Position numbers and translations under genes: made by a program. A stretch of DNA of 64,000 nucleotides from Dendrobates tinctorius (lineage: Eukaryota). The notes beneath the pieces were generated by a model, which worked only from the letters and a program-made list of their open reading frames with translations, did no database searches and was not told the DNA's origin. Below are positions 1-55,329 of this stretch, one piece after another. Numbering within the stretch: position 1 is the first letter of the stretch; each line of letters begins with the position of its first letter. Location of the stretch: NCBI RefSeq assembly GCF_039654945.1, contig NW_027361813.1, positions 1,488,001-1,552,000 on the forward strand, written 5' to 3'.

Positions 1-1286
1 GGGCCCGGCGCACAGAAGGGCCCGGCTCACGGCGCACAGAAGGGCCCGGCTCACGGCACACAGAAGGGCCCGGCTCACGGCGCACAGAAGGGCCCGGCTC
101 ACGGCGCACAGAAGGGCCCAGCTCACGGCGCACAGAAGGGCCCGGCTCACGGCGCACAGAAGGGCCCGGCTCACGGCGCACAGAAGGGCCCGGCTCACGG
201 CGCACAGAAGGGCCCGGCTCACGGCGCACAGAAGGGCCCGGCTCACGGCGCACAGAAGGGCCCGGCTCACGGCGCACAGAAGGGCCCGGCTCACGGCGCA
301 CAGAAGGGCCCGGCTCACGGCGCACAGAAGGGCCCGGCTGACGGCGCACAGAAGGGCCCGGCTGACGGCGCACAGAAGGGCCCGGCTGACGGCGCACAGA
401 AGGGCCCGGCTGACGGCGCACAGAAGGGCCCGGCTGACGGCGCACAGAAGGGCCCGGCTGACGGCGCACAGAAGGGCCCGGCTGACGGCGCACAGAAGGG
501 CCCGGCTGACGGCGCACAGAAGGGCCCGGCTGACGGCGCACAGAAGGGCCCGGCTGACGGCGCACAGAAGGGCCCGGCTGACGGCGCACAGAAGGGCCCG
601 GCTGACGGCTCACAGAAGGGCCCGGCTGACGGCTCACAGAAGGGCCCGGCTGACGGCTCACAGAAGGGCCCGGCTGACGGCTCACAGAGGGGCCCGGCTG
701 ACGGCTCACAGAGGGGCCCGGCTGACGGCTCACAGAGGGGCCCGGCTGACGGCTCACAGTGCACAGAAGGGCCCGGCTCACGGCGCACAGAAGGGCCCGG
801 CTCACGGCGCACAGAAGGGCCCGGCTCACGGCGCACAGAAGGGCCCGGCTCACGGCGCACAGAAGGGCCCGGCTCACGGCGCACAGAAGGGCCCGGCTCA
901 CGGCGCACAGAAGGGCCCGGCTCACGGCGCACAGAAGGGCCCGGCTCACGGCGCACAGAAGGGCCCGGCGCACAGAAGGGCCCGGCTCACAGAAGGGCCC
1001 GGCTCACGGCGCACAGAAGGGCCCGGCTCACGGCACACAGAAGGGCCCGGCTCACGGCACACAGAAGGGCCCGGCTCACGGCACACAGAAGGGCCCGGCT
1101 CACGGCACACAGAAGGGCCCGGCTCACGGCACACAGAAGGGCCCGGCTCACGGCACACAGAAGGGCCCGGCTCACGGCACACAGAAGGGCCCGGCTCACG
1201 GCACACAGAAGGGCCCGGCTCACGGCACACAGAAGGGCCCGGCTCACGGCACACAGAAGGGCCCGGCTCACGGCACACAGAAGGGC
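1..1286. repeat. 24-bp minisatellite (GGGCCCGGCTCACGGCGCACAGAA)n, truncated by the window start; degenerate copies resume at ~2975-3070
   Basis: Direct tandem periodicity of 24 nt, with blocks of variant units (CTCAC/CTGAC, GCGCA/GCACA/GCTCA). Confidence 0.97.
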
Positions 1287-2957
1287 TGTCATGCTCGCGC
1301 CTAGGCTGATTGGCGCGAGCCGGGGGGTTGTGGCCCCACTGTGTCACAAACCAGACTACCCTGGAAGGGGCGTGACTACAACAGCTACCTCGGTCTTCAC
1401 TGGAGCCTCTGATAGTGAGGTCAGGCTTGTGTGGCAGGTAGCTGCCGGGTGCCACTCCAGGGTGGTGTCTGACTGTGACTGCTGATCCCACTCGGGGACA
1501 AGGCACTTGGACAGGTGCTACAGGCAGGCGGGCACGGTTGGTACCCAGGCAGGCACGGCTGAGACACAGGGCAGGCAGGTGAGGTGTACGAAGAGACAGG
1601 TAGGGACCTGTTCACACAGCAGGAGCGGGTACTGGCTGGAAGGAATGGAATATGGAGGAACAGGTAGGGTCCTGTTCACACAGGAGGTGCAGGGTATGGG
1701 TACTGATAGGAGGGAGTGGAATATGATGGGACAGGTTTGGACCTGTTTACACAGGAGGAGCAGGTACGGATACAGCCAGGAGTGCGGAGTAGGCGGAGCC
1801 GCAGGAGTGCGGAGTAGGCGGAGCCGCAGGAGTGCGGAGTAGGCGGAGCCGCAGGAGTGCGGAGTAGGCGGAGCCGCAGGAGTGCGGAGTAGGCGGAGCC
1901 GCAGGAGTGCGGAGTAGGCGGAGCCGCAGGAGTGCGGAGTAGGCGGAGCCGCAGGAGTGCGGAGTAGGCAGAGCCGCAGGAGTGCGGAGTAGGCAGAGCC
2001 GCAGGAGTGCGGAGTAGGCAGAGCCGCAGGAGTGCGGAGTAGGCAGAGCCGCAGGAGTGCGGAGTAGGCAGAGCCACAGGAGTGCGGAGTAGGCAGAGCC
2101 ACAGGAGTGCGGAGTAGGCAGAGCCGCAGGAGTGCGGAGCTGCAACAAGAGGTTCTGCAGCAGGAGCGGAGCAAAGCTGAACCACAAGGTCTGTGAAGAG
2201 AAGCTGCAGCAAGAGGTTCTGCAGCAGCAGGAGCGGAGCAAAGCTGAACAACAAGGTCAGTGAAGAGAAGCTGCAGCAAGAGGTTCTGCAGCAGTAGAAG
2301 CGGAGCACAGGCAGAAGAGAGCGGAACCACTAGAGTACGGAGCACAAGCAGATAGGGAGGACACCTGGAAAGACACAGCAGGGAAAGGAACCACAGACAA
2401 GGAGGCAGGGGTAGGACAGAGTTCAGACAAGGCAAAGGAGTGAGACAAGGTAGAGGACTAAGGAGACAGATACAAAGCAAGGCTGGACCAGACAAGACAA
2501 GGAGTAATGGCACTGGGACCAGGATATTCTGACTCCTGGAGGGCGGACAGAGAAGTACTAGGCTAAGTACAGAGACAGGGCTAGGACAAAGCACAGAGAC
2601 CAGGATATTCAGCCTCCTGGAGGGAATACAGAGTACCAAGCAAGGCAAGGGGAAAAACCTCCAGAGAAGGAGATACACAGGAGAGGACCTGGCAGGCTCA
2701 GTAGCAAGATACTGAGTTTAGACATTGCTCAGGCTCCAAGGTTCAGCAGGTGGGGCAGCCTTAAATAGTAGAGGGCTCTAGGTAATTGGTCAGGGACACA
2801 TTAGCCAGGTGCACCCTGACTCAGGAAAAATGAACATAGCAGACAGAGGAGACAAGGAGCTGGCAGTAAACAGAAATCACAGCATGGCCTGGAGCAGTGA
2901 GCAAGATGGTGAGTGGGGAATGGGAGGCCATGCAGTGATGCCAGCAGAGTTGTTACA
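1287..2957 (-). mobile_element. Solo LTR (Gypsy-like) inserted into the 24-bp minisatellite
   Basis: Termini TGTCATG...TGTTACA (TG..CA). Flanks AGGGC and GGGGC form a 5-bp near-TSD. The host repeat resumes after 2957. No coding content. Strand is inferred only from a TATA-like CTATTTAAGG on the minus strand at ~2759-2768. Confidence 0.7.
1775..2140. repeat. 25-bp minisatellite (GCAGGAGTGCGGAGTAGGCGGAGCC)n inside the solo LTR
   Basis: About 14 tandem copies visible. Confidence 0.95.
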
Positions 2958-3522
2958 GGGGCTTGGCCTACTACGCACAGAGGGGCCCGGCTCACGGCGC
3001 ACAGAGGGGCCCGGCTCACGATGCACAGAGGGGCCTGGCGCACAGAGGGGCCCAACTCACGGCACACAGAGTGCAGAGAAAAGCAGTCACAGAAAAATAC
3101 AAGGGGCACAAGTACTGGGCATCAGAGTGGGCACCAAGAGTCATTATGAAAAAGATAACAAGTGCAGCTCTGACTTCACCCTGCAGACACAGATGCCTCA
3201 CGTCACAAGCAGCTGACTGCCCCGCACGGTGCGCCCATTGTGAGTGTGGAGGAGCCGGCGTGAGCAGCGGAGGAGAGTACAATGAAGGATAAAGGGAACG
3301 TTCCAGCTCCTTAAAAATCTTTAAACTTTATTGATCCATGTTAGTAAACAGTAGAGCGGTGCAGGCTCCAACACCAGGGTGAATCCGAGGGGTGATCTGA
3401 AGCCAGAACTTGATGACAGCTTGATCCCTGCTGGCACTGCGGGTGATGTATGGTGCCGGAGCCGATCACAGCGATTGCTGAGAGTCAGCGGACGTCGTTC
3501 CAGGTCCTCAATAATGAAATCC

Positions 3523-3929: not shown

Positions 3930-6900
3930 CATCCTTCAGCATGACCGGTTTGGCAGTGGGTGAGTAATAGTGTGGGGTGGCATTTCTTTGGAGGGCCGCA
4001 CAGCCCTCCATGTGCTCGCCAGAGGTAGCCTGACTGCCATTAGGTACGGGGATGAGATCCTCAGACCCCTTGTGAGACCATATGCTGGTGCAGTTGGCCC
4101 TGGGTTCCACCTAATGCAGGACAACACCAGACCTTATGTGGCTGCAGTGTGTCAGCAGTTCCTGCAAGATGAAGGCATTGAAGCTATGGACTGGCCCGTC
4201 CGTTCCCCAGACCTGAAGCCGATTGAGCACATCTGGGACATCATGTCTCGCTCCATCCACCAACATCACATTGCACCACAGACTGTCCAGGAGTTGGCGG
4301 ATGCTTTAGTCCACGTCTGGGAGGCCACACACACTACCGAGAGGCACGTGGGGGCCACACACACACACACACTACTGAGAGGCACGTGGGGGCCACACAC
4401 ACTACCGAGGGGCACGTGGAGGCCACACACACACTACCGAGAGGCACGTGGGGGCCACACACACACACACTACCGAGGGGCACGTGGAGGCCACACACAC
4501 ACTACCGAGAGGCACGTGGAGGCCACACACACACTACCGAGAGGCACGTGGGGGCCACACACACACTACCGAGAGGCACGTGGGGGCCACACACACACTA
4601 CCGAGAGGCACGTGGGGGCCACACACACACTACCGAGAGGCACGTGGGGGCCACACACACACTACCGAGAGGCACGTGGGGGCCACACACACAACACCGA
4701 GAGGCACGTGGGGGCCACACACACAACACCGAGAGGCACGTGGGGGCCACACACACAACACCGAGAGGCACGTGGGGGCCACACACACAACACCGAGAGG
4801 CACGTGGGGGCCACACACACAACACCGAGAGGCACGTGGGGGCCACACACACAACACCGAGAGGCACGTGGGGGCCACACACACAACACCGAGAGGCACG
4901 TGGGGGCCACACACACAACACCGAGAGGCACGTGGGGGCCACACACACACACAATACTGAGAGGCACGTGGGGGCCACACACACACACAATACTGAGAGG
5001 CACGTGGGGGCCACACACACACACACAATACTGAAAGGCACGTGGGGGCCACACACACACACACAATACTGAGAGGCACGTGGGGGCCACACACACACAC
5101 AATACTGAGAGGCACGTGGGGGCCACACACACAATACTGAGAGGCACGTGGGGGCCACACACACAATACTGAGAGGCACGTGGGGGCCACACACACAATA
5201 CTGAGAGGCACGTGGGGGCCACACACACAATACTGAGAGGCACGTGGGGGCCACACACACAATACTGAGAGGCACGTGGGGGCCACACACACAATACTGA
5301 GAGGCACGTGGGGGCCACACACACAATACTGAGAGGCACGTGGGGGCCACACACACAATACTGAGAGGCACGTGGGGGCCACACACACACACAATACTGA
5401 GAGGCACGTGGGGGCCACACACACAACACCGAGAGGCACGTGGGGGCCACACACACAACACCGAGAGGCACGTGGGGGCCACACACACAACACCGAGAGG
5501 CACGTGGGGGCCACACACACAACACCGAGAGGCACGTGGGGGCCACACACACAACACCGAGAGGCACGTGGGGGCCACACACACAACACCGAGAGGCACG
5601 TGGGGGCCACACACACAACACCGAGAGGCACGTGGGGGCCACACACACAACACCGAGAGGCACGTGGGGGCCACACACACACACAATACTGAGAGGCACG
5701 TGGGGGCCACACACACACACAATACTGAGAGGCACGTGGGGGCCACACACACACACACAATACTGAAAGGCACGTGGGGGCCACACACACACACACAATA
5801 CTGAGAGGCACGTGGGGGCCACACACACACACAATACTGAGAGGCACGTGGGGGCCACACACACAATACTGAGAGGCACGTGGGGGCCACACACACAATA
5901 CTGAGAGGCACGTGGGGGCCACACACACAATACTGAGAGGCACGTGGGGGCCACACACACAATACTGAGAGGCACGTGGGGGCCACACACACAATACTGA
6001 GAGGCACGTGGGGGCCACACACACAATACTGAGAGGCACGTGGGGGCCACACACACAATACTGAGAGGCACGTGGGGGCCACACACACACACAATACTGA
6101 GAGGCACGTGGGGGCCACACACACACACACAATACTGAAAGGCACGTGGGGGCCACACACACACACACAATACTGAGAGGCACGTGGGGGCCACACACAC
6201 ACACAATACTGAGAGGCACGTGGGGGCCACACACACAATACTGAGAGGCACGTGGGGGCCACACACACAATACTGAGAGGCACGTGGGGGCCACACACAC
6301 AATACTGAGAGGCACGTGGGGGCCACACACACAATACTGAGAGGCACGTGGGGGCCACACACACAATACTGAGAGGCACGTGGGGGCCACACACACAATA
6401 CTGAGAGGCACGTGGGGGCCACACACACAATACTGAGAGGCACGTGGGGGCCACACACACAATACTGAGAGGCACGTGGGGGCCACACACACAATACTGA
6501 GAGGCACGTGGGGGCCACACACACAATACTGAGAGGCACGTGGGGGCCACACACACAATACTGAGAGGCACGTGGGGGCCACACACACAATACTGAGAGG
6601 CACGTGGGGGCCACACACACAATACTGAGAGGCACGTGGGGGCCACACACACAATACTGAGAGGCACGTGGGGGCCACACACACACAATACTGAGAGGCA
6701 CGTGGGGGCCACACACACAATACTGAGAGGCACGTGGGGGCCACACACACAATACTGAGAGGCACGTGGGGGCCACACACACAATACTGAGAGGCACGTG
6801 GGGGCCACACACACAATACTGAGAGGCACGTGGGGGCCACACACACAATACTGAGAGGCACGTGGGGGCCACACACACAATACTGAGAGGCACGTGGGGG

Positions 6901-7670
6901 CCACACACACAATACTGAGAGGCACGTGGAGGCCACACACAATACTGAGAGGCACGTGGAGGCCACACACAATACTGAGAGGCACGTGGAGGCCACACAC
7001 AATACTGAGAGGCACGTGGAGGCCACACACAATACTGAGAGGCACGTGGAGGCCACACACAATACTGAGAGGCACGTGGAGGCCACACACAATACTGAGA
7101 GGCACGTGGAGGCCACACACAATACTGAGAGGCACGTGGAGGCCACACACAATACTGAGAGGCACGTGGAGGCCACACACAATACTGAGAGGCACGTGGA
7201 GGCCACACACAATACTGAGAGGCACGTGGAGGCCACACACAATACTGAGAGGCACGTGGAGGCCACACACAATACTGAGAGGCACGTGGAGGCCACACAC
7301 AATACTGAGAGGCACGTGGAGGCCACACACAATACTGAGAGGCACGTGGAGGCCACACACACTACTGAGAGGCACGTGGCGGCCACACACACTACTGAGA
7401 GGCACGTGGCGGCCACACACACTACTGAGAGGCACGTGGCGGCCACACACAATACTGAGCATCATTTTGACTTGTTTCCACTTTCATTTTGGGGGTCTCT
7501 CCAAAACCGGGCTTCCATTGGTTCAAAAATTTGTTTTCCATTGATTATTTTTGTGTGATTTTGTTGTCAGCACATTCAACTTTGTACTGAACAAAGTAAT
7601 CAATGAGAATATTTCATTCATTCAGATCTAGGATGTGTTATTGGAGTGTTCCCTTTATTTTTTTGAGCTG
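3930..7670 (+). mobile_element. Tc1-like transposon relic: 3' half of the DDE transposase plus the right end, split by a minisatellite
   Basis: The ORF at 3970 reads WGGIS...MQDNTRP...WPVRSPDLKPIEHIWD (Tc1 DD34E catalytic region). The element's 3' end resumes at ~7460 and finishes ...TTTTTTGAGCTG|TA. Confidence 0.9.
4322..7459. repeat. 30-38-bp minisatellite GAGAGGCACGTGG(G/A)GGC(CA)nATACT, derived from the Tc1 transposase C-terminus
   Basis: Unit length varies with an internal (CA)n tract. The unit translates as ARGGHTHY/stop, the end of this transposase type. Confidence 0.95.
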
Positions 7671-9519: not shown

Positions 9520-10662
9520 TCCTCCTCACTCACACTGGGCTCTTCCTCCTCCGCACTCACACCGGGCTCTTCCTCCTCCTCCGCACTCTCACCGGGCTCC
9601 TCCTCCTCCGCACTCACACCGGGCTCTTCCTCCTCCTCCGCACTCACACCGGGCTCCTCCTCCGCACTCACACCGGGCTCTTCCTCCTCCTTCTCAGCAC
9701 TCACACCGGGCTCTTCCTCCTCCTCCGCACTCTCACCGGGCTCCTCCTCCTCCTCCGCACTCTCACCGGGCTCTTCCTCCTCCTCCGCACTCTCACCGGA
9801 CTCCTCCGCACTCACACCGGGCTCCTCCTCCGCACTCTCACCGGGCTCTTCCTCCTCCTCCGCACTCTCACCGGGCTTTTCCTCCTCCTCCGCACTCTCT
9901 CCGGACTCCTCCTCCTCCACACTCTCACCGGGCTCTTCCTCCTCCTCCGCACTCTCACCGGGCTCTTCCTCCTCCTCCGCACTCTCACCGGGCTCTTCCT
10001 CCTCCTCCGCACTCTCTCCTCCTCCGCACTCTCACCGGGCTCTTCCTCCTCCTCCGCACTCTCACCGGGCTCTTCCTCCTCCTCCGCACTCTCACCGGGC
10101 TCTTCCTCCTCCTCCGCACTCTCTCCTCCTCCGCATTCTCTCCTCCTCCGCACTCTCTCCGGACTCCTCCTCCTCCACACTCTCACCGGGCTCTTCCTCC
10201 TCCTCCGCACTCTCACCGGGCTCTTCCTCCTCCTCCGCACTCTCTCCTCCTCCGCACTCTCACCGGGCTCTTCCTCCTCCTCCGCACTCTCACCGGGCTC
10301 TTCCTCCTCCTCCGCACTCTCACCGGGCTCTTCCTCCTCCTCCGCACTCTCTCCTCCTCCGCATTCTCTCCTCCTCCGCACTCTCTCCGGACTCCTCCTC
10401 CTCCACACTCTCACCGGGCTCTTCCTCCTCCTCCGCACTCTCACCGGGCTCTTCCTCCTCCTCCGCACTCTGCTCCGCACTCTCCTCCTCCTCCACACTC
10501 TCCTCCTCCTCCGCACTCTCCTCCTCCTCCTCCGCACTCTCCTCCTCCTCCGCACTCTCCTCCACCGCACTCTCCTCCTCCTCCTCCGCACTCTCCTCCT
10601 CCTCCACCGCACTCTCCTCCTCCTCCTCCGCACTCTCCTCCTCCTCCTCCTCCTCCGCACTC
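9520..10662. repeat. C/T-rich ~30-bp minisatellite (CCGCACTCTCACCGGGCTCTTCCTCCTCCT)n with variable (CCT)n
   Basis: Tandem periodicity. Length variants are mostly multiples of 3, which explains the spurious Glu-, Ser- and Pro-rich ORFs. Confidence 0.95.
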
Positions 10663-11109: not shown

Positions 11110-14100
11110 TGCTAATACCGGGGGCTCCGTTACTGCAGTGTGTGCGGCGTGGGCCCCGGGGTCTCCGTTACTGCAGTGTGTGCGGCGTGGGCCCCGGGGT
11201 CTCCGTTACTGCAGTGTGTGCGGCGTGGACTCCGGGGGCTCCGTTACTGCAGTGTGTGCGGCGTGGGCCCCGGGGTCTCCGTTACTGCAGTGTGTGCGGC
11301 GTGTGCTAATACCGGGGGCTCCGTTACTGCAGTGTGTGCGGCGTGGGCCCCGGGGTCTCCGTTACTGCAGTGTGTGGGGCGTGGGCTCCGGGGGCTCCGT
11401 TACTGCAGTGTGTGCGGCGGGGGCTCCGGGGTCTCCGTTACTGCAGTGTGTGCGGCGGGGGCTCCGGGGTCTCCGTTACTGCAGTGTGTGCGGCGTGGGC
11501 CCCGGGTTCTCCGTTACTGCAGTGTGTGCGGCGGGGGCTCCGGGGGCTCCGTTACTGCAGTGTGAGCTGCGTGGGCCCCGGGGGCTCCGTTACTGCAGTG
11601 TGTGCGGCGTGGGCTCCGGGGTCTCCGTTACTGCAGTGTGTGCGGCGTGGGCCCCGGGTTCTCCGTTACTGCAGTGTGTGCGGCGGGGGCTCCGGGGGCT
11701 CCGTTACTGCAGTGTGTGCGGCGTGGGCCCCGGGGGCTCCGTTACTGCAGTGTGAGCTGCGTGGGCTCCGGGGTCTCCGTTACTGCAGTGTGTGCGGCGT
11801 GGGCCCCGGGTTCTCCGTTACTGCAGTGTGTGCGGCGGGGGCTCCGGGGGCTCCGTTACTGCAGTGTGTGCGGCGTGGGCCCCGGGGGCTCCGTTACTGC
11901 AGTGTGTGCGGCGGGGGCTCCGGGGTCTCCGTTACTGCAGTGTGTGCGGCGGGGGCTCCGGGGTCTCCGTTACTGCAGTGTGTGCGGCGGGGGCTCCGGG
12001 GTCTCCGTTACTGCAGTGTGTGCGGCGTGGGCCCCGGGTTCTCCGTTACTGCAGTGTGTGGGGCGTGGGCCCCGGGGTCTCCGTTACTGCAGTGTGTGCG
12101 GCGTGGACTCCGGGGGCTCCGTTACTGCAGTGTGTGCGGCGTGGGCCCCGGGGTCTCCGTTACTGCAGTGTGTGCGGCGTGTGCTAATACCGGGGGCTCC
12201 GTTACTGCAGTGTGTGCGGCGTGGGCCCCGGGGTCTCCGTTACTGCAGTGTGTGGGGCGTGGGCTCCGGGGTCTCCGTTACTGCAGTGTGTGCGGCGGGG
12301 GCTCCGGGGTCTCCGTTACTGCAGTGTGTGCGGCGGGGGCTCCGGGGTCTCCGTTACTGCAGTGTGTGCGGCGTGGGCCCCGGGTTCTCCGTTACTGCAG
12401 TGTGTGCGGCGGGGGCTCCGGGGTCTCCGTTACTGCAGTGTGTGCGGCGTGGGCCCCGGGGGCTCCGTTACTGCAGTGTGTGCGGCGGGGGCTCCGGGGG
12501 CTCCGTTACTGCAGTGTGTGCGGCGGGGGCTCCGGGGTCTCCGTTACTGCAGTGTGTGCGGCGGGGGCTCCGGGGTCTCCGTTACTGCAGTGTGTGCGGC
12601 GTGGGCCCCGGGTTCTCCGTTACTGCAGTGTGTGCGGCGGGGGCTCCGGGGTCTCCGTTACTGCAGTGTGTGCGGCGTGGGCCCCGGGGTCTCCGTTACT
12701 GCAGTGTGTGCGGCGGGGGCTCCGGGGGCTCCGTTACTGCAGTGTGTGCGGCGTGGGCCCCGGGGTCTCCGTTACTGCAGTGTGTGCGGCGTGGGCCCCG
12801 GGGTCTCCGTTACTGCAGTGTGTGCGGCGTGGGCCCCGGGGTCTCCGTTACTGCAGTGTGTGCGGCGTGGGCCCCGGGGTCTCCGTTACTGCAGTGTGTG
12901 CGGCGGGGGCCCCGGGTTCTCCGTTACTGCAGTGTGTGCGGCGTGGGCTCCGTTACTGCAGTGTGTGGGGCGTGGGCCCCGGGGTCTCCGTTACTGCAGT
13001 GTGTGCGGCGTGGGCCCCGGGGGCTCCGTTACTGCAGTGTGTGCGGCGTGGGCCCCGGGGGCTCCGTTACTGCAGTGTGTGGGGCGTGGGCTCCGGGGTC
13101 TCCATTACTGCAGTGTGTGCGGCGGGGGCCCCGGGTTCTCCGTTACTGCAGTGTGTGCGGCGTGGGCTCCGGGGTCTCCGTTACTGCAGTGTGTGCGGCG
13201 TGGGCCCCGGGGGCTCCGTTACTGCAGTGTGTGCGGCGTGGGCTCCGGGGTCTCCGTTACTGCAGTGTGTGCGGCGTGGGCTCCGGGGGCTCCGTTACTG
13301 CAGTGTGTGCGGCGTGGGCTCCGGGGGCTCCGTTACTGCAGTGTGTGCGGCGTGGGCTCCGGGGGCTCCGTTACTGTAGTGTGTGCGGCGGGGGCCCCGG
13401 GTTCTCCGTTACTGCAGTGTGTGCGGCGTGGGCCCCGGGTTCTCCGTTACTGCAGTGTGTGCGGCGTGGGCTCCGGGGTCTCCGTTACTGCAGTGTGTGC
13501 GGCGTGGGCTCCGGGGGCTCCGTTACTGCAGTGTGTGCGGCGTGGGCCCCGGGGGCTCCGTTACTGCAGTGTGTGCGGCGTGGGCCCCGGGGTCTCCGTT
13601 ACTGCAGTGTGTGCGGCGTGGGCCCCGGGGTCTCCGTTACTGCAGTGTGTGCGGCGTGGGCCCCGGGGTCTCCGTTACTGTAGTGTGTGCGGCGTGGGCT
13701 CCGGGGGCTCCGTTACTGCAGTGTGTGCGGCGTGGGCTCCGGGGGCTCCGTTACTGCAGTGTGTGCGGCGTGGGCTCCGGGGGCTCCGTTACTGCAGTGT
13801 GTGCGGCGTGGGCCCCGGGGTCTCCGTTACTGCAGTGTGTGCGGCGTGTGCTCCGGGGGCTCCGTTACTGTAGTGTGTGCGGCGTGGGCTCCGGGGGCTC
13901 CGTTACTGCAGTGTGTGCGGCGTGGGCTCCGGGGGCTCCGTTACTGCAGTGTGTGCGGCGGGGGCCCCGGGTTCTCCGTTACTGCAGTGTGTGCGGCGTG
14001 GGCCCCGGGGTCTCCGTTACTGTAGTGTGTGCGGCGTGGGCCCCGGGGGCTCCGTTACTGCAGTGTGTGCGGCGTGGGCTCCGGGGGCTCCGTTACTGCA

Positions 14101-40855: not shown

Positions 40856-40868
40856 TACAGACAGCTAA

Positions 40869-41346
40869 GGCCTGTTTCACATTTCAGTTATTTGACGTCA
40901 GTCAAAATCCGCCAGGTTGTGAAAAAACGGATCCGTCAGCTTTGTGACACAAACGGATCCGCTTTAGCAGATAGTGACCAAAATGTAAAGGAAAACGAGT
41001 CGGGGGAAAAAAAGAATTTTTTTTTTTCTTTCCACGGCTGTTCCGGAACGCTAATAATCGGGGGATAAAATCCCTGCCACAGCGAATGGGCCGGGCATGC
41101 GCAATATAAATTAGCGGACCGTCGCTCGGGAAAACGTTGCAGAGTCCGTCTCATCCGCCCGGGAAACGCTAAAATTTTGACGGATACGTCAAAAAACAGG
41201 TGGGACGGACAACAGTCAGTCAAGGTCCGCCGCTAATGTAAGTCTATGGGGGGGGGAACGGATCCGCCCCTTTTTTTGGCGGATCCTTTTTTTCGAAAAT
41301 TGGCGGATTTTGACTGACGTCAAAAAACAGAAGTGTGAAACAGGCC
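40869..41346. mobile_element. PIF/Harbinger-type MITE, TAA TSD
   Basis: TAA|GGCCTGTTTCACA...TGTGAAACAGGCC|TAA, with CGGATCCG subterminal motifs. Confidence 0.9.
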
Positions 41347-41454
41347 TAACACACAGGCCTCCCTGTCATGATGAGCCTTCACCATATTTACATGGAATAG
41401 CTTCTGACGCTTGGCATGCTCAACTGGGGTCACCACATAGTGAACATCATATAG

Positions 41455-42222: not shown

Positions 42223-42471
42223 TAGCTCATTCTGTAACATAGGGACCAACACCCAAACCTTCTGCCCTCCTCGTAGGCCCTCAGTCTGGCATTATGGTCG
42301 TACCAGTCACGCTCTCATGGGCCAGGTTGCTCAGTTTTTGCGTTCTCTGAGCCGCAGTACATATTCAACCACCGAGACTCCCGTAGTTTTGGGGTCACCC
42401 TCCCAGCAGTCCTTAATCAAATCAAGTGGCCCCCTGACCCTCCCCCCATAAACCAGTTCAAAGGGGGAGAA

Positions 42472-45400
42472 TCCTGTAGACGCCTGGGGTACCTCTCTGT
42501 ACACAAACAACAGATGGGGGAGGTACCGCTCCCAGTCTCTCCCCTGTGGACGCCTGGGGTATCTCTGTACACAGACAACAGATGAGGGAGGTACCGCTCC
42601 CAGTCTCTCCCCTGTGGGTGCCTGGGGCACCTCTCTATACACAAACAACAGATGAGGGAGGTACCGCTCCCAGTCTCTCCCCTGTGGACGCCTGGGGCAC
42701 CTCTCTGTACACAGACAACAGATGGGGGAGGCACCGCTCCCAGCCTCTCCCCTGTGGACGCCTGGGGCACCTCTCTGTACACAGACAACAGATGGAGGAG
42801 GCACCGCTCCCAGTCTCTCCCCTGTGGGTGCCTGGGGCACCTCTCTATACACAAACAACAGATGAGGGAGGTACCGCTCCCAGTCTCTCCCCTGTGGACG
42901 CCTGGGGTACCTCTCTGTACACAGACAACAGATGGGGGAGGCACCGCTCCCAGTCTCTCCCCTGTGGACGCCTGGGGTACCTCTCTGTACACAGACAACA
43001 GATGGAGGAGGCACCGCTCCCAGTCTCTCCCCTGTGGACGCCTGGGGTACCTCTCTGTACACAGACAACAGATGGGGGAGGCACCGCTCCCAGTCTCTCC
43101 CCTGTGGACGCCTGGGGCACCTCTCTGTACACAGACAACAGATGGGGGAGGCACCGCTCCCAGTCTCTCCCCTGTGGACGCCTGGGGCACCACTCTGTAC
43201 ACAGACAACAGATGGGGGAGGCACCTCTCCCCTGTGGACGCCTGGGGCACCTCTCTGTACACAGACAACAGATGAGGGAGGTACCGCTCCCAGTCTCCCC
43301 TGTGGACGCTTGGGGCACCTCTCTGTACACAGACAACATGGGGGAGGCACCGCTCCCAGTCTCTCCCCTGTGGACGCCTGGGGTACCTCTCTGTACACAG
43401 ACAACAGATGGGGGAGGCACCGCTCCCAGTCTCTCCCCTGTGGACGCCTGGGGTACCTCTCTGTACACAGACAACAGATGGAGGAGGCACCGCTCCCAGT
43501 CTCTCCCCTGTGGACGCCTGGGGTACCTCTCTGTACACAGACAACAGATGGGGGAGGCACCGCTCCCAGTCTCTCCCCTGTGGACGCCTGGGGCACCTCT
43601 CTGTACACAGACAACAGATGGGGGAGGCACCGCTCCCAGTCTCTCCCCTGTGGACGCCTGGGGCACCACTCTGTACACAGACAACAGATGGGGGAGGCAC
43701 CTCTCCCCTGTGGACGCCTGGGGCACCTCTCTGTACACAGACAACAGATGAGGGAGGTACCGCTCCCAGTCTCTCCCCTGTGGACGCCTGGGGCACCACT
43801 CTGTACACAGACAACAGATGGGGGAGGCACCTCTCCCCTGTGGACGCCTGGGGCACCTCTCTGTACACAGACAACAGATGAGGGAGGTACCGCTCCCAGT
43901 CTCTCCCCTGTGGACGCCTGGGGCACCTCTCTGTACACAGACAACAGATGAGGGAGGTACCGCTCCCAGTCTCTCCCCTGTGGACGCCTGGGGCACCTCT
44001 CTGTACACAAACAGATGAGGGAGGCACCGCTCCCAGTCTCTCCCCTGTGGACGCCTGGGGTACCTCTCTGTACACAAACAGATGGGGGAGGCATCGCTCC
44101 CAGTCTCTCCCCTGTGGACGCCTGGGGCACCTCTCTGTACACAGACAACAGATGGGGGAGGCATCGCTCCCAGTCTCTCCCAGTCTCTCCCCTGTGGACG
44201 CCTGGGGCACCTCTCTGTACACAGACAACAGATGGGGGAGGCACCGCTCCCAGTCTCTCCCCTGTGGACGCCTGGGGCACCTCTCTGTACACAGACAACA
44301 GATGGGGGAGGCACCGCTCCCAGTCTCTCCCCTGTGGACGCCTGGGGCACCTCTATGTACACAGACAACAGATGGGGGAGGCACCGCTCCCAGTCTCTCC
44401 CCTGTGGACGCCTGGGGCACCTCTATGTACACAGACAACAGATGGGGGAGGCACCGCTCCCAGTCTCTCCCCTGTGGATGCCTGGGGTACCTCTCTGTAC
44501 ACAGACAACAGATGGGGGAGGCACCGCTCCCAGTCTCTCCCCTGTGGACGCCTGGGGCACCTCTCTGTATACAGACAACAGATGAGGCACCGCTCCCAGT
44601 CTCTCCCCTGTGGGTGCCTGGGGCACCTCTCTGTACACAGACAACAGATGGGGGAGGCACCGCTCCCAGTCTCTCCCCTGTGGACGCCTGGGGCACCTCT
44701 ATGTACACAGACAACAGATGGGGGAGGCACCGCTCCCAGTCTCTCCCCTGTGGACGCCTGGGGCACCTCTATGTACACAGACAACAGATGAGGGAGGCAC
44801 CGCTCCCAGTCTCTCCCCTGTGGACGCCTGGGGCACCTCTATGTACACAGACAACAGATGAGGGAGGCACCGCTCCCAGTCTCTCCCCTGTGGGTGCCTG
44901 GGGCACCTCTCTGTACACAGACAACAGATGAGGGAGGCACCGCTCCCAGTCTCTCCCCTGTGGACGCCTGGGGTACCTCTCTGTACACAGACAACAGCTG
45001 GGGGAGGCACCGCTCCCAGTCTCTCCCCTGTGGACGCCTGGGGCACCTCTATGTACACAGACAACAGATGGGGGAGGCACCGCTCCCAGTCTCCCCCCTG
45101 TGGGTGCCTGGGGCACCTCTCTGTACACAGACAACAGATGAGGGAGGCACCGCTCCCAGTCTCTCCCCTGTGGACGCCTGGGGTACCTCTCTGTACACAG
45201 ACAACAGCTGGGGGAGGCACCGCTCCCAGTCTCTCCCCTGTGGACGCCTGGGGCACCTCTATGTACACAGACAACAGATGGGGGAGGCACCGCTCCCAGT
45301 CTCCCCCCTGTGGGTGCCTGGGGCACCTCTCTGTACACAGACAACAGATGAGGGAGGCACCGCTCCCAGTCTCTCCCCTGTGGACGCCTGGGGTACCTCT

Positions 45401-45585
45401 CTGTACACAGACAACAGCTGGGGGAGGCACCGCTCCCAGTCTCTCCCCTGTGGACGCCTGGGGTACCTCTCTGTACACAGACAACAGATGGGGGAGGCAC
45501 CGCTCCCAGTCTCTCCCCTGTGGACGCCTGGGGCACCTCTATGTACACAGACAACAGCTGGGGGAGGCACCGCTCCCAGTCTCTT
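42472..45585. repeat. 70-bp minisatellite derived from the integrase core C-terminal segment
   Basis: The unit encodes RDWERCLPHLLSVYREVPQASTG on the minus strand; about 45 copies. Confidence 0.97.
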
Positions 45586-46129
45586 CCTTCAGTCTCCACC
45601 AGCAGTTTGAGCATTTGTTTTAATGTCCCGTTGAAACGCTCGCAGAGTCCGTTGGTTTGGGGATGACAGGCGCTGGCCACAAAATGCTGCCCTTGGATTT
45701 TCTCGCCGAGGCTTTCCATCAGATCGGACATGAATTGGGTTCCCTGATGGGTTAACATTTCCCTGGGGAAACCCACACGAGAGCACAGTCAGTAAAGCAT
45801 CCGCCACTTTGCTCGCATGGAGGACAGCGCCGCAGCTTCCGGATACCGTGTAGCATAGTCCACCACTGTGAGGATGAACTTTCTGCTAGAGTTGCTAGGG
45901 ATTGTAAGTGGCCCTATGGACAGCCTCTCGCTGGAAGGGCTCATCGATCATTGGCAGTGGTATCAGTGGGGCTTTCTGTATATCCCCAGACTTTCCAACT
46001 CTGACCAACTAAGCAGGATCGACAGTAGCTGGCTATATCTGTCCCCATCTTGGGCCAATAAAAGTTAAGTGGAGCCCGTACTGTAAGCCACAGGCGATAG
46101 GGGGGCCCTTGTGACCAGGATGTATGCCA

Positions 46130-49389: not shown

Positions 49390-49602
49390 AGGGAGGGGAA
49401 GAGGAGGGGGCAGCTCGGTAGTAGGGGGGGGGGGCGGCTCGGTGGGAGGGGGGCGCGGCTCAGTAGGAGGGGGCAGCTCGGTAGGAGGAGGAGGAGAGGG
49501 CGCAGCTCGGTAGGAGGAGGAGAGGGCGCAGCTCGGTTGGAGGAGGAGAGGGCGCAGCTCGGTAGGAGGAGGAGGAGAGGGCGCAGCTCGGTAGGAGGAG
49601 GG
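49390..49602. repeat. Short purine-rich minisatellite (GGAGAGGGCGCAGCTCGGTA(GGA)n)
   Basis: About 7 variable copies. Confidence 0.85.
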
Positions 49603-50171: not shown

Positions 50172-50317
50172 CCCAGACATCACACGGGTGTAAGGGGCCG
50201 CCCCGGAGGACATCACACGGGTGTAAGGGGCCGCCCCGGAGGACACCACACGGGTGTAAGGGGCCGCCCCGGAGGACACCACACGGGTGTAAGGGGCCGC
50301 CCCGGAGGACACCACAC
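50172..50317. repeat. 33-bp minisatellite just downstream of the HYLS1 stop
   Basis: Four copies of CACACGGGTGTAAGGGGCCGCCCCGGAGGACA(C/T). Confidence 0.93.
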
Positions 50318-50338: not shown

Positions 50339-51199
50339 CTAGGAGGAGTCTCCTCGTGGCATTTTGCCATGCACAAGGGCATGTCGGATGGCCCATCGTA
50401 GCCGGAACCTCTTCTTCTCTGTGGGGATTACATATGAGTTGGGCAATGGCAGAGCTCGGGGGAGAAGCAGAGGTGGTGCTGACAGCATCCTCTCGCGGAC
50501 CCCCCAGCAGAGCTCCTTCTTACTCCTTTCCACAGACCCCTGCAGGGCGTCCCAGCTTTGCTTGTACTCTTGGTAGCGTCCTACGGGATCGGAGCGCTGC
50601 CTGTACTGCTCCAGCAGGGAATACGGCGGGATACGGATGAAGGATTTCTTGGCTTGTGACTCGGTACACGGGACTCTGGAATCGTGTAGCTCGGACTCGG
50701 CAGAAAGCATGGACTCGTCACACACCTGCACCTGGCCGTCACTGCTCCTGCGCAGCACCTTGCGAGTTAGAGCTGGTGGCCTTGGTTTTCCGAGCACTTG
50801 AGCCCCCGCTCTGACTGTGTGCTTGGTGTAGGGGTCCAGGGCTCCCCTGTGCGCCGGGGCGTTAATCACACACTGCTGACTAGAAGCCGAATGCTTGTCC
50901 CAGTCACTCACAGACGTTCCGCCATTCTCCTTCCCAACATCGGTGGGGTCTTCAAAGGGTCCCAAGGAGTCTTCCAGTGCGGCTCGGCTGCGCATCAGGC
51001 ACTCCAGGTCTTCTTTGAATTGTAGAAGCCTTTGCTGGGGAACAGAGGTGAATCCCAATAGAGAGAGCTCAGAGCGCAGCTCCTCCTCCGAGACCGTCAG
51101 TGGAGCGCTACGGAGGGAGCTGTCCGAGGAAAGCTCATGGAAACTGTGGGGGTCTGCGCTTCTGCTGGACAGCGACCCGTCGCTGCTCAACACTGACAT
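50339..51199 (-). CDS. HYLS1: Centriolar/ciliogenesis protein HYLS1 (hydrolethalus syndrome 1), single coding exon, 286 aa
   Basis: RKVLRR..DG..QVCDES, KSFI, SDPVGRYQEYKQSWD, KELCWGVRERML and PNSYVIPTEKKRFRLRWAIR match the HYLS1 C-terminal box as recalled. Acceptor TTCTTCTCTACTCTCTAG| with exon starting at 51219; Kozak-like AAGATG; minus-strand AATAAA at 49964-49959. Confidence 0.92.
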   Translation of the reverse strand: MSVLSSDGSLSSRSADPHSFHELSSDSSLRSAPLTVSEEELRSELSLLGFTSVPQQRLLQFKEDLECLMRSRAALEDSLGPFEDPTDVGKENGGTSVSDWDKHSASSQQCVINAPAHRGALDPYTKHTVRAGAQVLGKPRPPALTRKVLRRSSDGQVQVCDESMLSAESELHDSRVPCTESQAKKSFIRIPPYSLLEQYRQRSDPVGRYQEYKQSWDALQGSVERSKKELCWGVRERMLSAPPLLLPRALPLPNSYVIPTEKKRFRLRWAIRHALVHGKMPRGDSS

Positions 51200-51329: not shown

Positions 51330-52484
51330 GACATTCACAGGGAGGAGCTACAGGAGAGGGAGACCGCCACAGGGAGGAGCGACGGGAGAGGGAGACCGCC
51401 ACAGGGAGGAGCGACGGGAGAGGGAGACCGCCACAGGGAGGAGCGACGGGAGAGGGAGACCGCCACAGGGAGGAGTTATCAGAGGAGAGGGAGACCGCCA
51501 TAGGGAGGAGCCACGGGAGAGGGAGACCGACACAGGGAGGAGCCACGGGAGAGGGAGACCGACACAGGGAGGAGCCACGGGAGAGGGAGACCGACACAGG
51601 GAGGAGCCACGGGAGAGGGAGACCGACACAGGGAGGAGCCACGGGAGAGGGAGACCGCCACAGGGAGGAGCCACGGGAGAGGGAGACCGACACAGGGAGG
51701 AGCCACGGGAGAGGGAGACCGCCACAGGGAGGAGCCACGGGAGAGGGAGACCGCCACAGGGAGGAGCCACGGGAGAGGAGACCGCCACAGGGAGGAGCGA
51801 CGGGAGAGGGAGACCGCCACAGGGAGGAGCGACGGGAGAGGGAGACCGCCACAGGGAGGAGCCACGGGAGAGGGAGACCGCCACAGGGAGGAGCCACGGG
51901 AGAGGGAGACCGCCACAGGGAGGAGCCACGGGAGAGGGAGACCGCCACAGGGAGGAGCCACGGGAGAGGGAGACCGACACAGGGAGGAGCCACGGGAGAG
52001 GGAGACCGACACAGGGAGGAGCCACGGGAGAGGGAGACCGCCACAGGGAGGAGCCCGCCACAGGGAGGAGCCACGGGAGAGGGAGACCGCCACAGGGAGG
52101 AGCCACGGGAGAGGGAGACCGCCACAGGGAGGAGCCACGGGAGAGGGAGACCGCCACAGGGAGGAGCCACGGGAGAGGGAGACCGACACAGGGAGGAGCC
52201 ACGGGAGAGGGAGACCGCCACAGGGAGGAGCGACGGGAGAGGGAGACCGCCACAGGGAGGAGCCACGGGAGAGGGAGACCGACACAGGGAGGAGCCACGG
52301 GAGAGGGAGACCGACACAGGGAGGAGCCACGGGAGAGGGAGACCGCCACAGGGAGGAGCCACGGGAGAGGGAGACCGCCACAGGGAGGAGCCACGGGAGA
52401 GGGAGACCGCCACAGGGAGGAGCCACGGGAGAGGGAGACCGCCACAGGGAGGAGCGATGGGAGAGGGACGGGAGAGGGAGACCG
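51330..52484. repeat. 32-bp minisatellite (CACAGGGAGGAGCCACGGGAGAGGGAGACCGC)n filling HYLS1 intron 1
   Basis: About 36 copies between the minus-strand donors (52513/52559) and the acceptor (51220). Confidence 0.97.
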
Positions 52485-52810: not shown

Positions 52811-52812
52811 GG

Positions 52813-55329
52813 ACCCCCGTGTATACAGCGCGGAGAGGGGTCGGGACGCCCCGTGTATACAGCGCGGAGAGGGGTCGGGACGCCCCGTGTAGACAGCGCG
52901 GAGAGGGGTCGGGACGCCCCGTGTAGACAGCGCGGAGAGGGGTCGGGACGCCCCGTGTAGACAGCGCGGAGAGGGGTCGGGACGCCCCGTGTAGACAGCG
53001 CGGAGAGGGGTCGGGACGCCCCGTGTATACAGCGCGGAGAGGGGTCGGGACGCCCCGTGTAGACAGCGCGGAGAGGGGTCGGGACGCCCCGTGTAGACAG
53101 CGCGGAGAGGGGTCGGGACGCCCCGTGTAGACAGCGCGGAGAGGGGTCGGGACGCCCCGTGTAGACAGCGCGGAGAGGGGTCGGGACGCCCCGTGTATAC
53201 AGCGCGGAGAGGGGTCGGGACGCCCCGTGTAGACAGCGCGGAGAGGGGTCGGGACGCCCCGTGTATACAGCGCGGAGAGGGGTCGGGACGCCCCGTGTAT
53301 ACAGCGCGGAGAGGGGTCGGGACGCCCCGTGTAGACAGCGCGGAGAGGGGTCGGGACGCCCCGTGTAGACAGCGCGGAGAGGGGTCGGGACGCCCCGTGT
53401 AGACAGCGCGGAGAGGGGTCGGGACGCCCCGTGTAGACAGCGCGGAGAGGGGTCGGGACGCCCCGTGTAGACAGCGCGGAGAGGGGTCGGGACGCCCCGT
53501 GTAGACAGCGCGGAGAGGGGTCGGGACGCCCCGTGTAGACAGCGCGGAGAGGGGTCGGGACGCCCCGTGTAGACAGCGCGGAGAGGGGTCGGGACGCCCC
53601 GTGTAGACAGCGCGGAGAGGGGTCGGGACGCCCCGTGTAGACAGCGCGGAGAGGGGTCGGGACGCCCCGTGTAGACAGCGCGGAGAGGGGTCGGGACGCC
53701 CCGTGTAGACAGCGCGGAGAGGGGTCGGGACGCCCCGTGTAGACAGCGCGGAGAGGGGTCGGGACGCCCCGTGTAGACAGCGCGGAGAGGGGTCGGGACG
53801 CCCCGTGTAGACAGCGCGGAGAGGGGTCGGGACGCCCCGTGTAGACAGCGCGGAGAGGGGTCGGGACGCCCCGTGTAGACAGCGCGGAGAGGGGTCGGGA
53901 CGCCCCGTGTAGACAGCGCGGAGAGGGGTCGGGACGCCCCGTGTAGACAGCGCGGAGAGGGGTCGGGACGCCCCGTGTAGACAGCGCGGAGAGGGGTCGG
54001 GACGCCCCGTGTAGACAGCGCGGAGAGGGGTCGGGACGCCCCGTGTAGACAGCGCGGAGAGGGGTCGGGACGCCCCGTGTATACAGCGCGGAGAGGGGTC
54101 GGGACGCCCCGTGTATACAGCGCGGAGAGGGGTCGGGACGCCCCGTGTATACAGCGCGGAGAGGGGTCGGGACGCCCCGTGTAGACAGCGCGGAGAGGGG
54201 TCGGGACGCCCCGTGTAGACAGCGCGGAGAGGGGTCGGGACGCCCCGTGTAGACAGCGCGGAGAGGGGTCGGGACGCCCCGTGTAGACAGCGCGGAGAGG
54301 GGTCGGGACGCCCCGTGTAGACAGCGCGGAGAGGGGTCGGGACGCCCCGTGTAGACAGCGCGGAGAGGGGTCGGGACGCCCCGTGTAGACAGCGCGGAGA
54401 GGGGTCGGGACGCCCCGTGTAGACAGCGCGGAGAGGGGTCGGGACGCCCCGTGTATACAGCGCGGAGAGGGGTCGGGACGCCCCGTGTAGACAGCGCGGA
54501 GAGGGGTCGGGACGCCCCGTGTAGACAGCGCGGAGAGGGGTCGGGACGCCCCGTGTAGACAGCGCGGAGAGGGGTCGGGACGCCCCGTGTAGACAGCGCG
54601 GAGAGGGGTCGGGACGCCCCGTGTAGACAGCGCGGAGAGGGGTCGGGACGCCCCGTGTAGACAGCGCGGAGAGGGGTCGGGACGCCCCGTGTAGACAGCG
54701 CGGAGAGGGGTCGGGACGCCCCGTGTAGACAGCGCGGAGAGGGGTCGGGACGCCCCGTGTAGACAGCGCGGAGAGGGGTCGGGACGCCCCGTGTAGACAG
54801 CGCGGAGAGGGGTCGGGACGCCCCGTGTAGACAGCGCGGAGAGGGGTCGGGACGCCCCGTGTAGACAGCGCGGAGAGGGGTCGGGACGCCCCGTGTAGAC
54901 AGCGCGGAGAGGGGTCGGGACGCCCCGAGTAGACAGCGCGGAGAGGGGTCGGGACGCCCCGTGTAGACAGCGCGGAGAGGGGTCGGGACGCCCCGTGTAG
55001 ACAGCGCGGAGAGGGGTCGGGACGCCCCGTGTAGACAGCGCGGAGAGGGGTCGGGACGCCCCGTGTAGACAGCGCGGAGAGGGGTCGGGACGCCCCGTGT
55101 AGACAGCGCGGAGAGGGGTCGGGACGCCCCGTGTAGACAGCGCGGAGAGGGGTCGGGACGCCCCGTGTAGACAGCGCGGAGAGGGGTCGGGACGCCCCGT
55201 GTAGACAGCGCGGAGAGGGGTCGGGACGCCCCGTGTAGACAGCGCGGAGAGGGGTCGGGACGCCCCGTGTAGACAGCGCGGAGAGGGGTCGGGACGCCCC
55301 GTGTAGACAGCGCGGAGAGGGGTCGGGAC
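52813..55329. repeat. Highly homogeneous 34-bp minisatellite (GTGTAGACAGCGCGGAGAGGGGTCGGGACGCCCC)n
   Basis: About 74 copies, with essentially one recurrent variant (TAGAC/TATAC). Cut off by a hAT insertion. Confidence 0.98.

What the first reader, a model, noticed from the sequence alone, without database searches (positions are those of the whole stretch)
1..55329. Pervasive in-place birth of unrelated minisatellites from local sequence
Seen: about 16 arrays with unrelated 24-81-bp units occupy roughly 40% of the window. In at least four cases the unit is a slice of its single-copy host: a Tc1 transposase end, two Gypsy integrase segments and a RUSF1 exon/intron junction. In each, the host continues on both sides. 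Several junctions show microhomology, e.g. TCC(G/T)GTCT at the RUSF1 repeat. Inference: a regional, sequence-independent process (microhomology-seeded duplication followed by runaway expansion, plausibly subtelomeric or recombination-linked) is turning random ~30-80-bp segments into kb-scale arrays. This differs from a satellite family spreading through the genome.
Basis: partly seen in the sequence, partly recalled or inferred. Interest (0 to 1): 0.72.

Follow-up and report, generated by a model that had tools for sequence, protein, structure and literature searches.

The report
Locally born minisatellites in a frog locus
About 40% of this poison-frog stretch is some twenty mostly unrelated short tandem repeats that grew in place from local DNA, including pieces of two transposons and a gene's exon end; the pattern is real, but repeat growth of this kind is already described for frog chromosomes.

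Summary
Tandem Repeats Finder gives 19 arrays in 1-55,329, 13 of them at least 300 bp, with units of 24-80 bp. They cover 25.4 kb, which is 46% of that span and 40% of the window.

All four "slice of the host" cases hold.
- A6 repeats the last eight codons plus the stop of a Tc1-like transposase. About 69 nt of the host are missing at its left junction.
- A15 and A14 repeat residues 427/428-451 and about 545-556 of a Ty3/Gypsy integrase. Both junctions are intact, and relatives carry each slice once.
- A10 repeats the end of a RUSF1 exon plus its splice donor.

Units are private, except that A1 and A5 share one.

Birth in place is well supported. Microhomology is clear only at some junctions. 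The process is not fully blind to sequence: units are 11 GC points richer than their flanks.

The idea is not new. Bredeson et al. 2024 describe recombination-linked tandem-repeat growth, including transposon-slice minisatellites, in frog chromosome ends. This scan has also reported the same pattern on another piece of this genome (s1-362311).

Verdict: a clean new example of a known kind, of moderate to low interest.

The parts
6..1286 (.). A1: 24-bp minisatellite, about 54 copies, cut by the window start. Same unit family as A5.
1627..2307 (.). A2 (71 bp x 1.9), A3 (25 bp x 14.5) and A4 (67 bp x 2.6): three abutting small arrays in a purine-rich stretch.
2973..3043 (.). A5: 3-4 copies of the A1-type 24-bp unit, about 82% identical to A1.
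3964..4325 (+). Host of A6: fragment of a Tc1-like transposase (DDE_3), 84% identical to full-length relatives. It ends at '...VWE'.
4326..7459 (+). A6: 32-bp unit x about 97. The unit is the last 8 codons, the stop and a few 3' bases of the Tc1-like transposase. 23 host codons are missing at the left junction. The host 3' untranslated part resumes at 7460.
9520..10662 (.). A7: old, degenerate 30-bp array (74-79% matches) with a 228-bp higher-order period. It is rich in TCC.
11118..20023 (.). A8: 38-bp unit x 241 (8.9 kb), with a 29-bp variant. It ends about 70 bp before the putative RUSF1 start codon. Origin unknown.
21462..21518 (.). A9: perfect 26-bp duplication (2.2 copies, 100% identity) with a 5-nt repeat at its ends. 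A newborn tandem duplication.
22587..23145 (+). A10: 80-bp unit x 7. The unit is the last ~50 nt of a RUSF1 exon plus ~30 nt of intron, including the GT donor. An 8-nt direct repeat (7 of 8 matching) bounds the unit.
20095..28749 (+). RUSF1 coding exons seen in the window. PF04884 positions 11-40, 37-77, 101-138, 138-172 and 180-240, then PF24160. A10 and A11 lie in its introns.
26838..27772 (.). A11: 36-bp unit x 26, in a RUSF1 intron. It starts 20 nt after a copy of a dispersed repeat (26542-26818). Origin of the unit not established.
31961..32427 (.). A12: 28-bp unit x 17, inside the 8.7-kb material nested in the Gypsy element. Origin unknown.
39764..40173 (.). A13: 28-bp unit x 15, in the same nested material. 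Origin unknown.
30311..46078 (-). Host of A14 and A15: one degenerate Ty3/Gypsy element with integrase before reverse transcriptase. It is colinear with relative P0123 residues 260-1086. It is interrupted at 31629-40334 by nested insertions.
41460..42223 (-). A14: 32-bp unit x 24. The unit is a slice of the integrase C-terminal SH3-like part (about residues 545-556 of P0123). The host is colinear on both sides.
42473..45584 (-). A15: 70-bp unit x 45. The unit is integrase residues 427/428-451 of P0123, hit about 40 times by tblastn. The host is colinear on both sides.
49467..49601 (.). A16: 26-bp unit x 5, rich in GGA.
50176..50317 (.). A17: 33-bp unit x 4.3, 99% identical. It lies 22 nt beyond the HYLS1 stop codon.
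50339..51199 (-). HYLS1: intact 286-aa open reading frame, 87% identical to Ranitomeya imitator HYLS1.
51336..52468 (.). A18: 32-bp unit x 35 with a 96-bp higher-order period. It has three G-runs per unit and starts 137 nt upstream of the HYLS1 ATG.
52811..55329 (.). A19: 34-bp unit x 74, 99% identical, with 86% of units the same. The youngest large array.

Best explanation
This is a gene-bearing, GC-rich stretch of a dendrobatid (poison) frog genome carrying RUSF1 and HYLS1. Many independent minisatellites have arisen in it where they now lie.

Proposed sequence of events:
1. A local 24-80-bp segment is duplicated in tandem. In some cases this happens between short direct repeats of 5-10 nt.
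2. The pair then grows, and is partly homogenised, by out-of-register exchange or replication slippage between neighbouring units, up to 9 kb.

Any resident sequence can be the seed: an exon end with its donor, the 3' end of a Tc1-like transposase, or two slices of a Gypsy integrase. GC-rich segments are favoured, or become GC-richer while repeated.

Shown here: the arrays, their privacy within the window, their origin from the host sequence in four cases, a newborn duplication, and local similarity gradients.

Inferred: the driver is the high meiotic recombination of frog chromosome-end regions, as proposed by Bredeson et al. 2024.
For: Arrays and coverage:
-.

Private units:
-.

Host colinearity across A14 and A15:
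- tblastn of P0123 gives residues 316-451 running into the first A15 unit.
- Residues 428-556 run from the last A15 unit into A14.
- Residues 540-593 run out of A14.
- Relatives P0121 (Ranitomeya), P0122 (Dendrobates tinctorius) and P0123 have each slice once.

A6:
- Full-length Tc1-like relatives end in the eight residues that the unit encodes.

A10:
- It sits exactly between Pfam PF04884 positions 138 and 138 of consecutive RUSF1 exons.

Birth stage:
- A9 is a perfect 2.2-copy duplication with a 5-nt terminal repeat.
- Further 2-4-copy duplications exist.

Growth by local exchange:
- Unit identity falls with distance in A1, A3, A6 and A14.
- A6 and A14 have more diverged edge units.

A range of ages:
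- 74-99% matches between units across arrays.

Time dependence:
- Young intact transposons and AT-rich stretches (33-39 kb and 55.3-63.4 kb) carry no minisatellites.

GC trend:
- Units are +0.11 GC over their flanks.
- In A15 the edge unit that matches the relatives' protein differs from the array consensus by four changes, all A/T to G/C.

Literature:
- PMC10794172 reports the same landscape and the same hypothesis for frogs.
Against: - No reads and no second assembly could be examined. Array lengths and single-locus status in the whole genome are therefore unverified.
- The position on the chromosome and the local recombination rate are unknown. The contig is 2.8 Mb.
- For about 15 of the 19 arrays the source sequence could not be identified.
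- Phase remainders at array ends are spread widely, so no single birth model fits all arrays.
- The edge-versus-interior divergence contrast is not significant overall (p = 0.21).
- The GC-direction evidence rests on four substitutions in one array.
Confidence: 0.78

Rival explanations
1. Some or most arrays belong to multi-locus minisatellite or satellite families that spread through the genome, by transposon carriage or ectopic exchange, and were not born at this locus.
For: A1 and A5 share a unit at two places 1.7 kb apart. Large phase remainders at several array ends (A3 13/25, A12 19/28, A13 21/28) do not fit a simple in-place duplication. Notes of this scan describe multi-locus minisatellites in this genome that Tx1-type elements target (unchecked).
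Against: Eighteen of 20 units are private within 64 kb. For A6, A10, A14 and A15 the unit is a slice of the sequence that flanks it. Relatives of the transposons lack the arrays.
Confidence: 0.12
2. The arrays, or their lengths, are artefacts of assembling repetitive long reads.
For: No read evidence could be obtained. Very homogeneous arrays such as A19 (99% identity) are hard to size.
Against: The arrays carry ordered internal variants, higher-order periods and unique junctions with coding sequence on both sides. Twenty different units in one window are not what a collapse or expansion error produces.
Confidence: 0.04
3. The arrays are kept because they do something, for example splice-site arrays, binding-site arrays or G-rich structures at promoters.
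For: A8 ends about 70 nt before the putative RUSF1 start codon. A18 starts 137 nt upstream of HYLS1. A10 multiplies a splice donor. A18 is a near-continuous G-quadruplex-type motif.
Against: The units are unrelated and have no shared core. Only one array meets a strict quadruplex pattern. Three arrays lie in dead transposon fragments. No Rfam family matches. No expression or binding data were available.
Confidence: 0.06

Closest known systems
Tandem-repeat-rich extended subtelomeres of frogs (Bredeson et al. 2024, PMC10794172)
   Same: Dense GC-rich tandem arrays. Some are built from a slice of a transposon, and only particular copies are expanded. TGGG/AGGG/ACAG are enriched. The proposed drive is unequal exchange in recombination-rich DNA, with a rise in GC.
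   Different: That work covers Xenopus tropicalis and four other frogs and treats enriched repeat families. Here the species is a dendrobatid and almost every array is private. Seeds include coding slices of a Tc1-like and a Gypsy element and an exon end. Chromosome position and recombination rate are unknown here.
Transposon-derived minisatellites of the human genome (Ahmed and Liang 2012, PMC3389668)
   Same: Single-locus arrays whose unit is an internal piece of a transposon copy, started after insertion and grown by local duplication. Only a minority show flanking 5-20-nt direct repeats or an incomplete end unit.
   Different: In human they make up about 0.3% of the genome. Here transposon-derived arrays alone make up 11% of the window (7.0 kb).
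[quoted passage not shown] Both cited through PMC3389668.
   Same: A9, A10 and A17 have 5-10-nt repeats bounding the founder unit. A8, A11 and A19 end one base short of a whole unit.
   Different: Many arrays here fit neither pattern. A6 has lost 69 nt of host at one junction.
Exon-end and splice-donor minisatellites
   Same: A10 copies an exon end with its GT donor seven times (notes).
   Different: None in kind. A10 is one more case.

Membership tests
Minisatellite (tandem repeat with a unit of about 10-100 bp) | Head-to-tail copies of a 10-100-bp unit | tested here: met
   Periods 24-80 bp, 2 to 241 copies
Minisatellite (tandem repeat with a unit of about 10-100 bp) | Copy number varies between individuals or haplotypes | not testable with these tools
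Transposon-derived, single-locus minisatellite | The unit is an internal slice of a transposon, and that transposon flanks the array on both sides | tested here: met
   A14 and A15 are colinear with P0123 across both junctions. A6 is met on the right. On the left the transposase is present but 23 codons are missing.
Transposon-derived, single-locus minisatellite | Other members of the transposon family carry the slice once | tested here: met
   P0121, P0122 and P0123 for Gypsy; P0002 and P0018 for Tc1-like. These are protein-level relatives only, not other genomic copies of this species.
Frog extended-subtelomere repeat landscape (Bredeson 2024) | Lies within the terminal 20-30 Mb of a chromosome, with a high recombination rate | not testable with these tools
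   No chromosome coordinates or map. The contig is 2.8 Mb.
Frog extended-subtelomere repeat landscape (Bredeson 2024) | Array density well above the genome mean, with raised GC | tested here: met
   40.6% of the window against 10.67% genome-wide in X. tropicalis. Unit GC is about 0.65 and flank GC about 0.54. The comparison is across species.
Frog extended-subtelomere repeat landscape (Bredeson 2024) | Units enriched in TGGG, AGGG and ACAG | tested here: met
   5.35 against 3.09 per 100 bp, p = 0.002. Against GC-matched background p = 0.04. The enrichment is modest.
Multi-locus satellite family | The same unit forms arrays at several loci | tested here: inconclusive
   Within the window only A1 and A5 share a unit. 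The rest of the genome could not be searched.
Birth between short direct repeats (Haber and Louis model) | A 5-10-nt direct repeat bounds the founder unit, so the array has whole units plus that remainder | tested here: inconclusive
   Met at A9 (5 nt), A10 (7 of 8) and A17 (10 nt). Weak at A14 (5 of 7). Not met at A15 (3 nt or fewer), the right end of A6, A3, A12 and A13.

The most novel reading that the evidence does not exclude
Dendrobatid frogs may have an unusually high rate of de novo minisatellite birth. It would act on almost any resident sequence (exons, promoter-proximal DNA, dead transposons) in GC-rich gene regions. If so, locally born private arrays, and not only transposons, would add materially to gene and genome size. 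The published dyeing-poison-frog genome paper does not mention this component: 'tandem' and 'satellite' occur 0 times in it. Coding-slice arrays such as A15 would then give a genome-wide, polarisable record of GC-biased change inside arrays.
Probability: 0.25. Interest if true: 0.55.

Novelty: new member of a known kind. Interest (0 to 1): 0.3.

Why it matters
The locus shows minisatellite birth at several stages side by side. It runs from a perfect two-copy duplication to a 9-kb array.

In four cases the ancestral single-copy sequence is known, because it is coding sequence of a transposon or a gene. That makes the direction of change readable. An example is the four A/T-to-G/C differences between A15 and its ancestral-like edge unit.

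It also shows arrays pressed against two working genes, RUSF1 and HYLS1.

It does not change the current picture. Recombination-linked growth of tandem repeats in frog chromosome ends, including transposon-slice minisatellites, is published. This scan has already reported the same pattern on other DNA of this genome.

Tried and rejected
Tools that did not run or could not answer:
Orthologous HYLS1 loci and other copies could not be fetched.
- The search of earlier findings by sequence with part of A8 gave nothing.

Annotation searches that found nothing:
- Pfam on the flanks of A7, A8, A12, A13, A16, A18 and A19.
- Rfam across the whole window.

Ideas tested and dropped:
- A11 derives from the dispersed repeat next to it. 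Rejected: alignment score 7 against a null mean of 6.9.
- A universal core motif. Rejected: GGAG occurs in 15 of 18 units, barely above the null maximum.
- G-quadruplex motifs as a general property. Rejected: only A18 qualifies.
- Edge units are generally more diverged than interior units. Not significant, p = 0.21.
- Array-end phase remainders cluster near 0 or near a whole unit. They do not.
- Two separate Gypsy elements. Rejected: the integrase block and the RT/RNase H block are one element with integrase first.


Full report
**What is in the window**

Tandem Repeats Finder at score >=100 reports 20 distinct arrays. I label them A1-A20; coordinates are under 'parts'.
- Nineteen lie inside the finding's span of 1-55,329.
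- Fourteen arrays in the window are at least 300 bp long; thirteen of these lie inside the span.
- Periods are 24-80 bp. A20, at the 5' end of a CR1 element and outside the finding, has a 128-bp period.
- Together the arrays cover 25,969 bp, or 40.6% of the window.
- Without A20 they cover 25,439 bp, or 46% of the 55.3-kb span.

The window has no N runs. Arrays sit in GC-rich sequence (0.55-0.71 per 2 kb). The AT-rich stretches at 33-39 kb and 55.3-63.4 kb carry none.

**Taxon and genes**

An intact 286-aa HYLS1 reading frame lies at 50339-51199 on the minus strand. Its closest named relatives are HYLS1 of Ranitomeya imitator (87%), Phyllobates terribilis (81%) and Anomaloglossus (73%). The genome is therefore a dendrobatid frog close to Ranitomeya. 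This agrees with this scan's earlier notes, which name the dyeing poison frog. The same search places the window's own protein on a 2.8-Mb contig.

RUSF1 lies on the plus strand. Separate exon pieces match Pfam PF04884 at positions 11-40, 37-77, 101-138, 138-172 and 180-240, and then PF24160. I searched the exons one by one and built no joined model.

**Are the units unrelated?**

Mostly.
- All-against-all comparison of modal units, and a self-BLAST of the window, link only A1 and A5 (about 82% identity, 1.7 kb apart).
- A3, A7 and A16 score slightly above a shuffled null. What they share is GGAG/GGA-rich composition, and they do not align by BLAST.
- No unit has a diverged copy elsewhere in the non-array part of the window, apart from partial copies at its own edges.

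**The four 'slice of the host' cases**

A6, Tc1-like transposase:
- tblastn with the window's intact Tc1 transposase finds a second, different Tc1-like fragment at 4054-4338 that runs straight into A6. Pfam DDE_3 confirms it.
- A database search returned full-length relatives of 341 aa. The host is 84% identical to them up to '...VWE'.
- The relatives continue for 23 more residues and then end in ARGGHTHY. One frame of the A6 unit reads exactly these eight residues plus a stop, over and over.
- After the last unit the sequence continues like the 3' untranslated part of such elements. Compare the read-through tail of P0106.
However, about 69 nt of host are missing at the left junction. That junction is not pristine.

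A15 and A14, Ty3/Gypsy integrase:
- Pfam finds an integrase zinc-binding domain (45944-46189, minus strand), a weak integrase-core hit just before A15, and the SH3-like C-terminal domains just after A14.
- A region search with the last A15 unit plus its flank returned frog Ty3/Gypsy polyproteins. The best was from Ranitomeya at 90%.
- tblastn of P0123 (1098 aa) against the window is colinear on the minus strand:
  - residues 260-451 run from 46078 into the first A15 unit;
  - residues 427/428-451 are hit about 40 more times through A15;
  - residues 428-556 run from the last A15 unit across the 249-bp spacer into A14;
  - residues 540-593 run out of A14;
  - residues 592-727 follow at 40713-40334;
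  - residues 727-1086 (reverse transcriptase and RNase H) follow at 31629-30311.
- This is one element with integrase ahead of reverse transcriptase. From my own knowledge, that order is known from Gmr1-type Gypsy elements. It is split by 8.7 kb of nested insertions.
- Both arrays have intact junctions. Relatives from Ranitomeya, Dendrobates tinctorius and Pristimantis carry each slice once.
- Units of 70 and 32 bp are not multiples of three, so both arrays break the reading frame.

A10, RUSF1:
- The unit is the last ~50 nt of an exon plus ~30 nt of intron, including the GT donor. It is repeated seven times.
- The exon before it matches PF04884 up to position 138, and the next exon starts at position 138.
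- The first two copies are identical to each other. The other five differ from them at several sites.

**Microhomology and birth**

The clearer cases:
- At A10 an 8-nt motif starts the unit and recurs just after the last unit, matching at 7 of 8 positions.
- A9 is a perfect 26-bp duplication of 2.2 copies with a 5-nt terminal repeat. It is a newborn event.
- A17 ends with a 10-nt partial unit.

The weaker or negative cases:
- A14 has a weak 5-of-7 match.
- A15 has at most 3 nt, and the right end of A6 has none.
- A8, A11 and A19 end one base short of a whole unit.
- A3, A12 and A13 end in mid-unit.

The two classical birth models are summarised in PMC3389668. One relies on short flanking direct repeats. 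The other relies on slipped mispairing that leaves an incomplete end unit. Each fits some arrays, and several arrays fit neither. That is also what the human survey found.

More 2-4-copy duplications appear at a lower TRF threshold. The window therefore holds a continuum from birth to 241 copies.

**Growth**
- Unit identity falls with distance between units in A1, A3, A6 and A14.
- A6 and A14 have more diverged edge units.
- A7 and A18 have higher-order periods.

These are the marks of local out-of-register exchange or slippage. The edge effect is not general (p = 0.21).

Array ages differ, from 74-79% matches in A7 to 99% in A19, where 86% of units are identical. Intact young transposons carry no minisatellite in their bodies. 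These are a Tc1 with 98%-identical 208-bp terminal repeats, a hAT reading frame, a second Tc1/mariner-like reading frame, and a CR1.

**Is it blind to sequence?**

Not entirely.
- Modal units have about 0.65 GC against about 0.54 in their own 300-bp flanks (mean difference 0.11, p = 1e-4).
- The three tetramers that Bredeson et al. found enriched in frog subtelomeric repeats are also enriched here. The figures are 5.35 against 3.09 per 100 bp (p = 0.002), falling to p = 0.04 against GC-matched background.
- G- or C-runs are enriched only as far as GC explains.
- There is no shared core motif.
- The A15 slice is richer in GC than any other 70-nt window of its host. A14 and A6 lie in the upper fifth. 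A10 does not.
- In A15 the downstream edge unit encodes the same residues as the relatives, so it is probably closest to the founder. The array consensus differs from it at four sites, all A/T to G/C.
- This fits a rise in GC inside arrays, but it is a small sample.

**Comparison with what is known**

Bredeson et al. 2024 (PMC10794172) report the following.
- Tandem arrays cover 10.67% of X. tropicalis chromosomes.
- The arrays are concentrated in the terminal ~30 Mb, where recombination is concentrated (r = 0.68).
- Some arrays derive from portions of transposons. A 52-bp slice of one SINE is expanded only in subtelomeric copies.
- Other frogs have different expansions.
- They propose that recombination drives the expansion and raises GC.

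The genome paper on the dyeing poison frog does not mention tandem or satellite repeats. For dendrobatids the component seems undescribed in the papers I could search.

This scan has already reported the same pattern on another piece of this genome (s1-362311). It also holds many single locally born minisatellites elsewhere. This argues that the process is not peculiar to this region. These are unchecked notes, not evidence.

**What could not be done**
- Three points therefore remain open: single-locus status in the whole genome, array lengths, and the subtelomeric or recombination link.

**Verdict**
- Birth in place is well supported.
- Microhomology seeding and sequence independence are only partly supported.
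- Regionality is untested.
- The mechanism is a known one.
- This is a clear new example of a known kind.

Noticed in passing
window 30311-46078 (minus strand): The integrase block (46078-41347) and the RT/RNase H block (31629-30311) belong to one Ty3/Gypsy element with integrase ahead of reverse transcriptase. It is colinear with frog and turtle relatives that have the same order. It is split at one point by 8.7 kb of nested insertions.
   Followed up: partly
window 11118-20095: The 8.9-kb array A8 ends about 70 nt before the putative first coding exon of RUSF1 (ATG near 20095). The space where a promoter or 5' untranslated region would be expected is almost wholly minisatellite.
   Followed up: no
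window 50176-52468: HYLS1 is hemmed in by arrays. A17 starts 22 nt after its stop codon, and A18 starts 137 nt upstream of its ATG. A18 is a near-continuous G-quadruplex-type motif on the plus strand.
   Followed up: partly
window 63471-64000: A 128-bp tandem repeat (4+ copies, 98% identical, cut by the window end) lies at the 5' end of an apparently intact CR1 element (ORF1 62450-63544, ORF2 59541-62270, minus strand). It could be a monomer-type 5' region of the element family and not a locally born array.
   Followed up: no
window 37774-39376: A young Tc1 element with an intact 339-aa transposase and 208-bp terminal inverted repeats that are 98% identical. A poly-C run of about 20 follows its right end (39388-39406).
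   Followed up: partly
window 42473-45584: The edge unit of A15 that matches the relatives' protein differs from the array consensus by four substitutions, all A/T to G/C. This hints at GC-biased change inside arrays.
   Followed up: partly
window 22591-22752: The first two A10 copies are identical over 81 nt. Copies 3-7 form a separate, diverged group. This suggests a recent re-duplication or a conversion from the exon copy.
   Followed up: no
window 23765-24046 and 26542-26818; 20425-21054 and 29434-29976: Two pairs of unidentified dispersed repeats inside the RUSF1 region (80% direct and 73% inverted). A11 begins 20 nt after one copy.
   Followed up: partly
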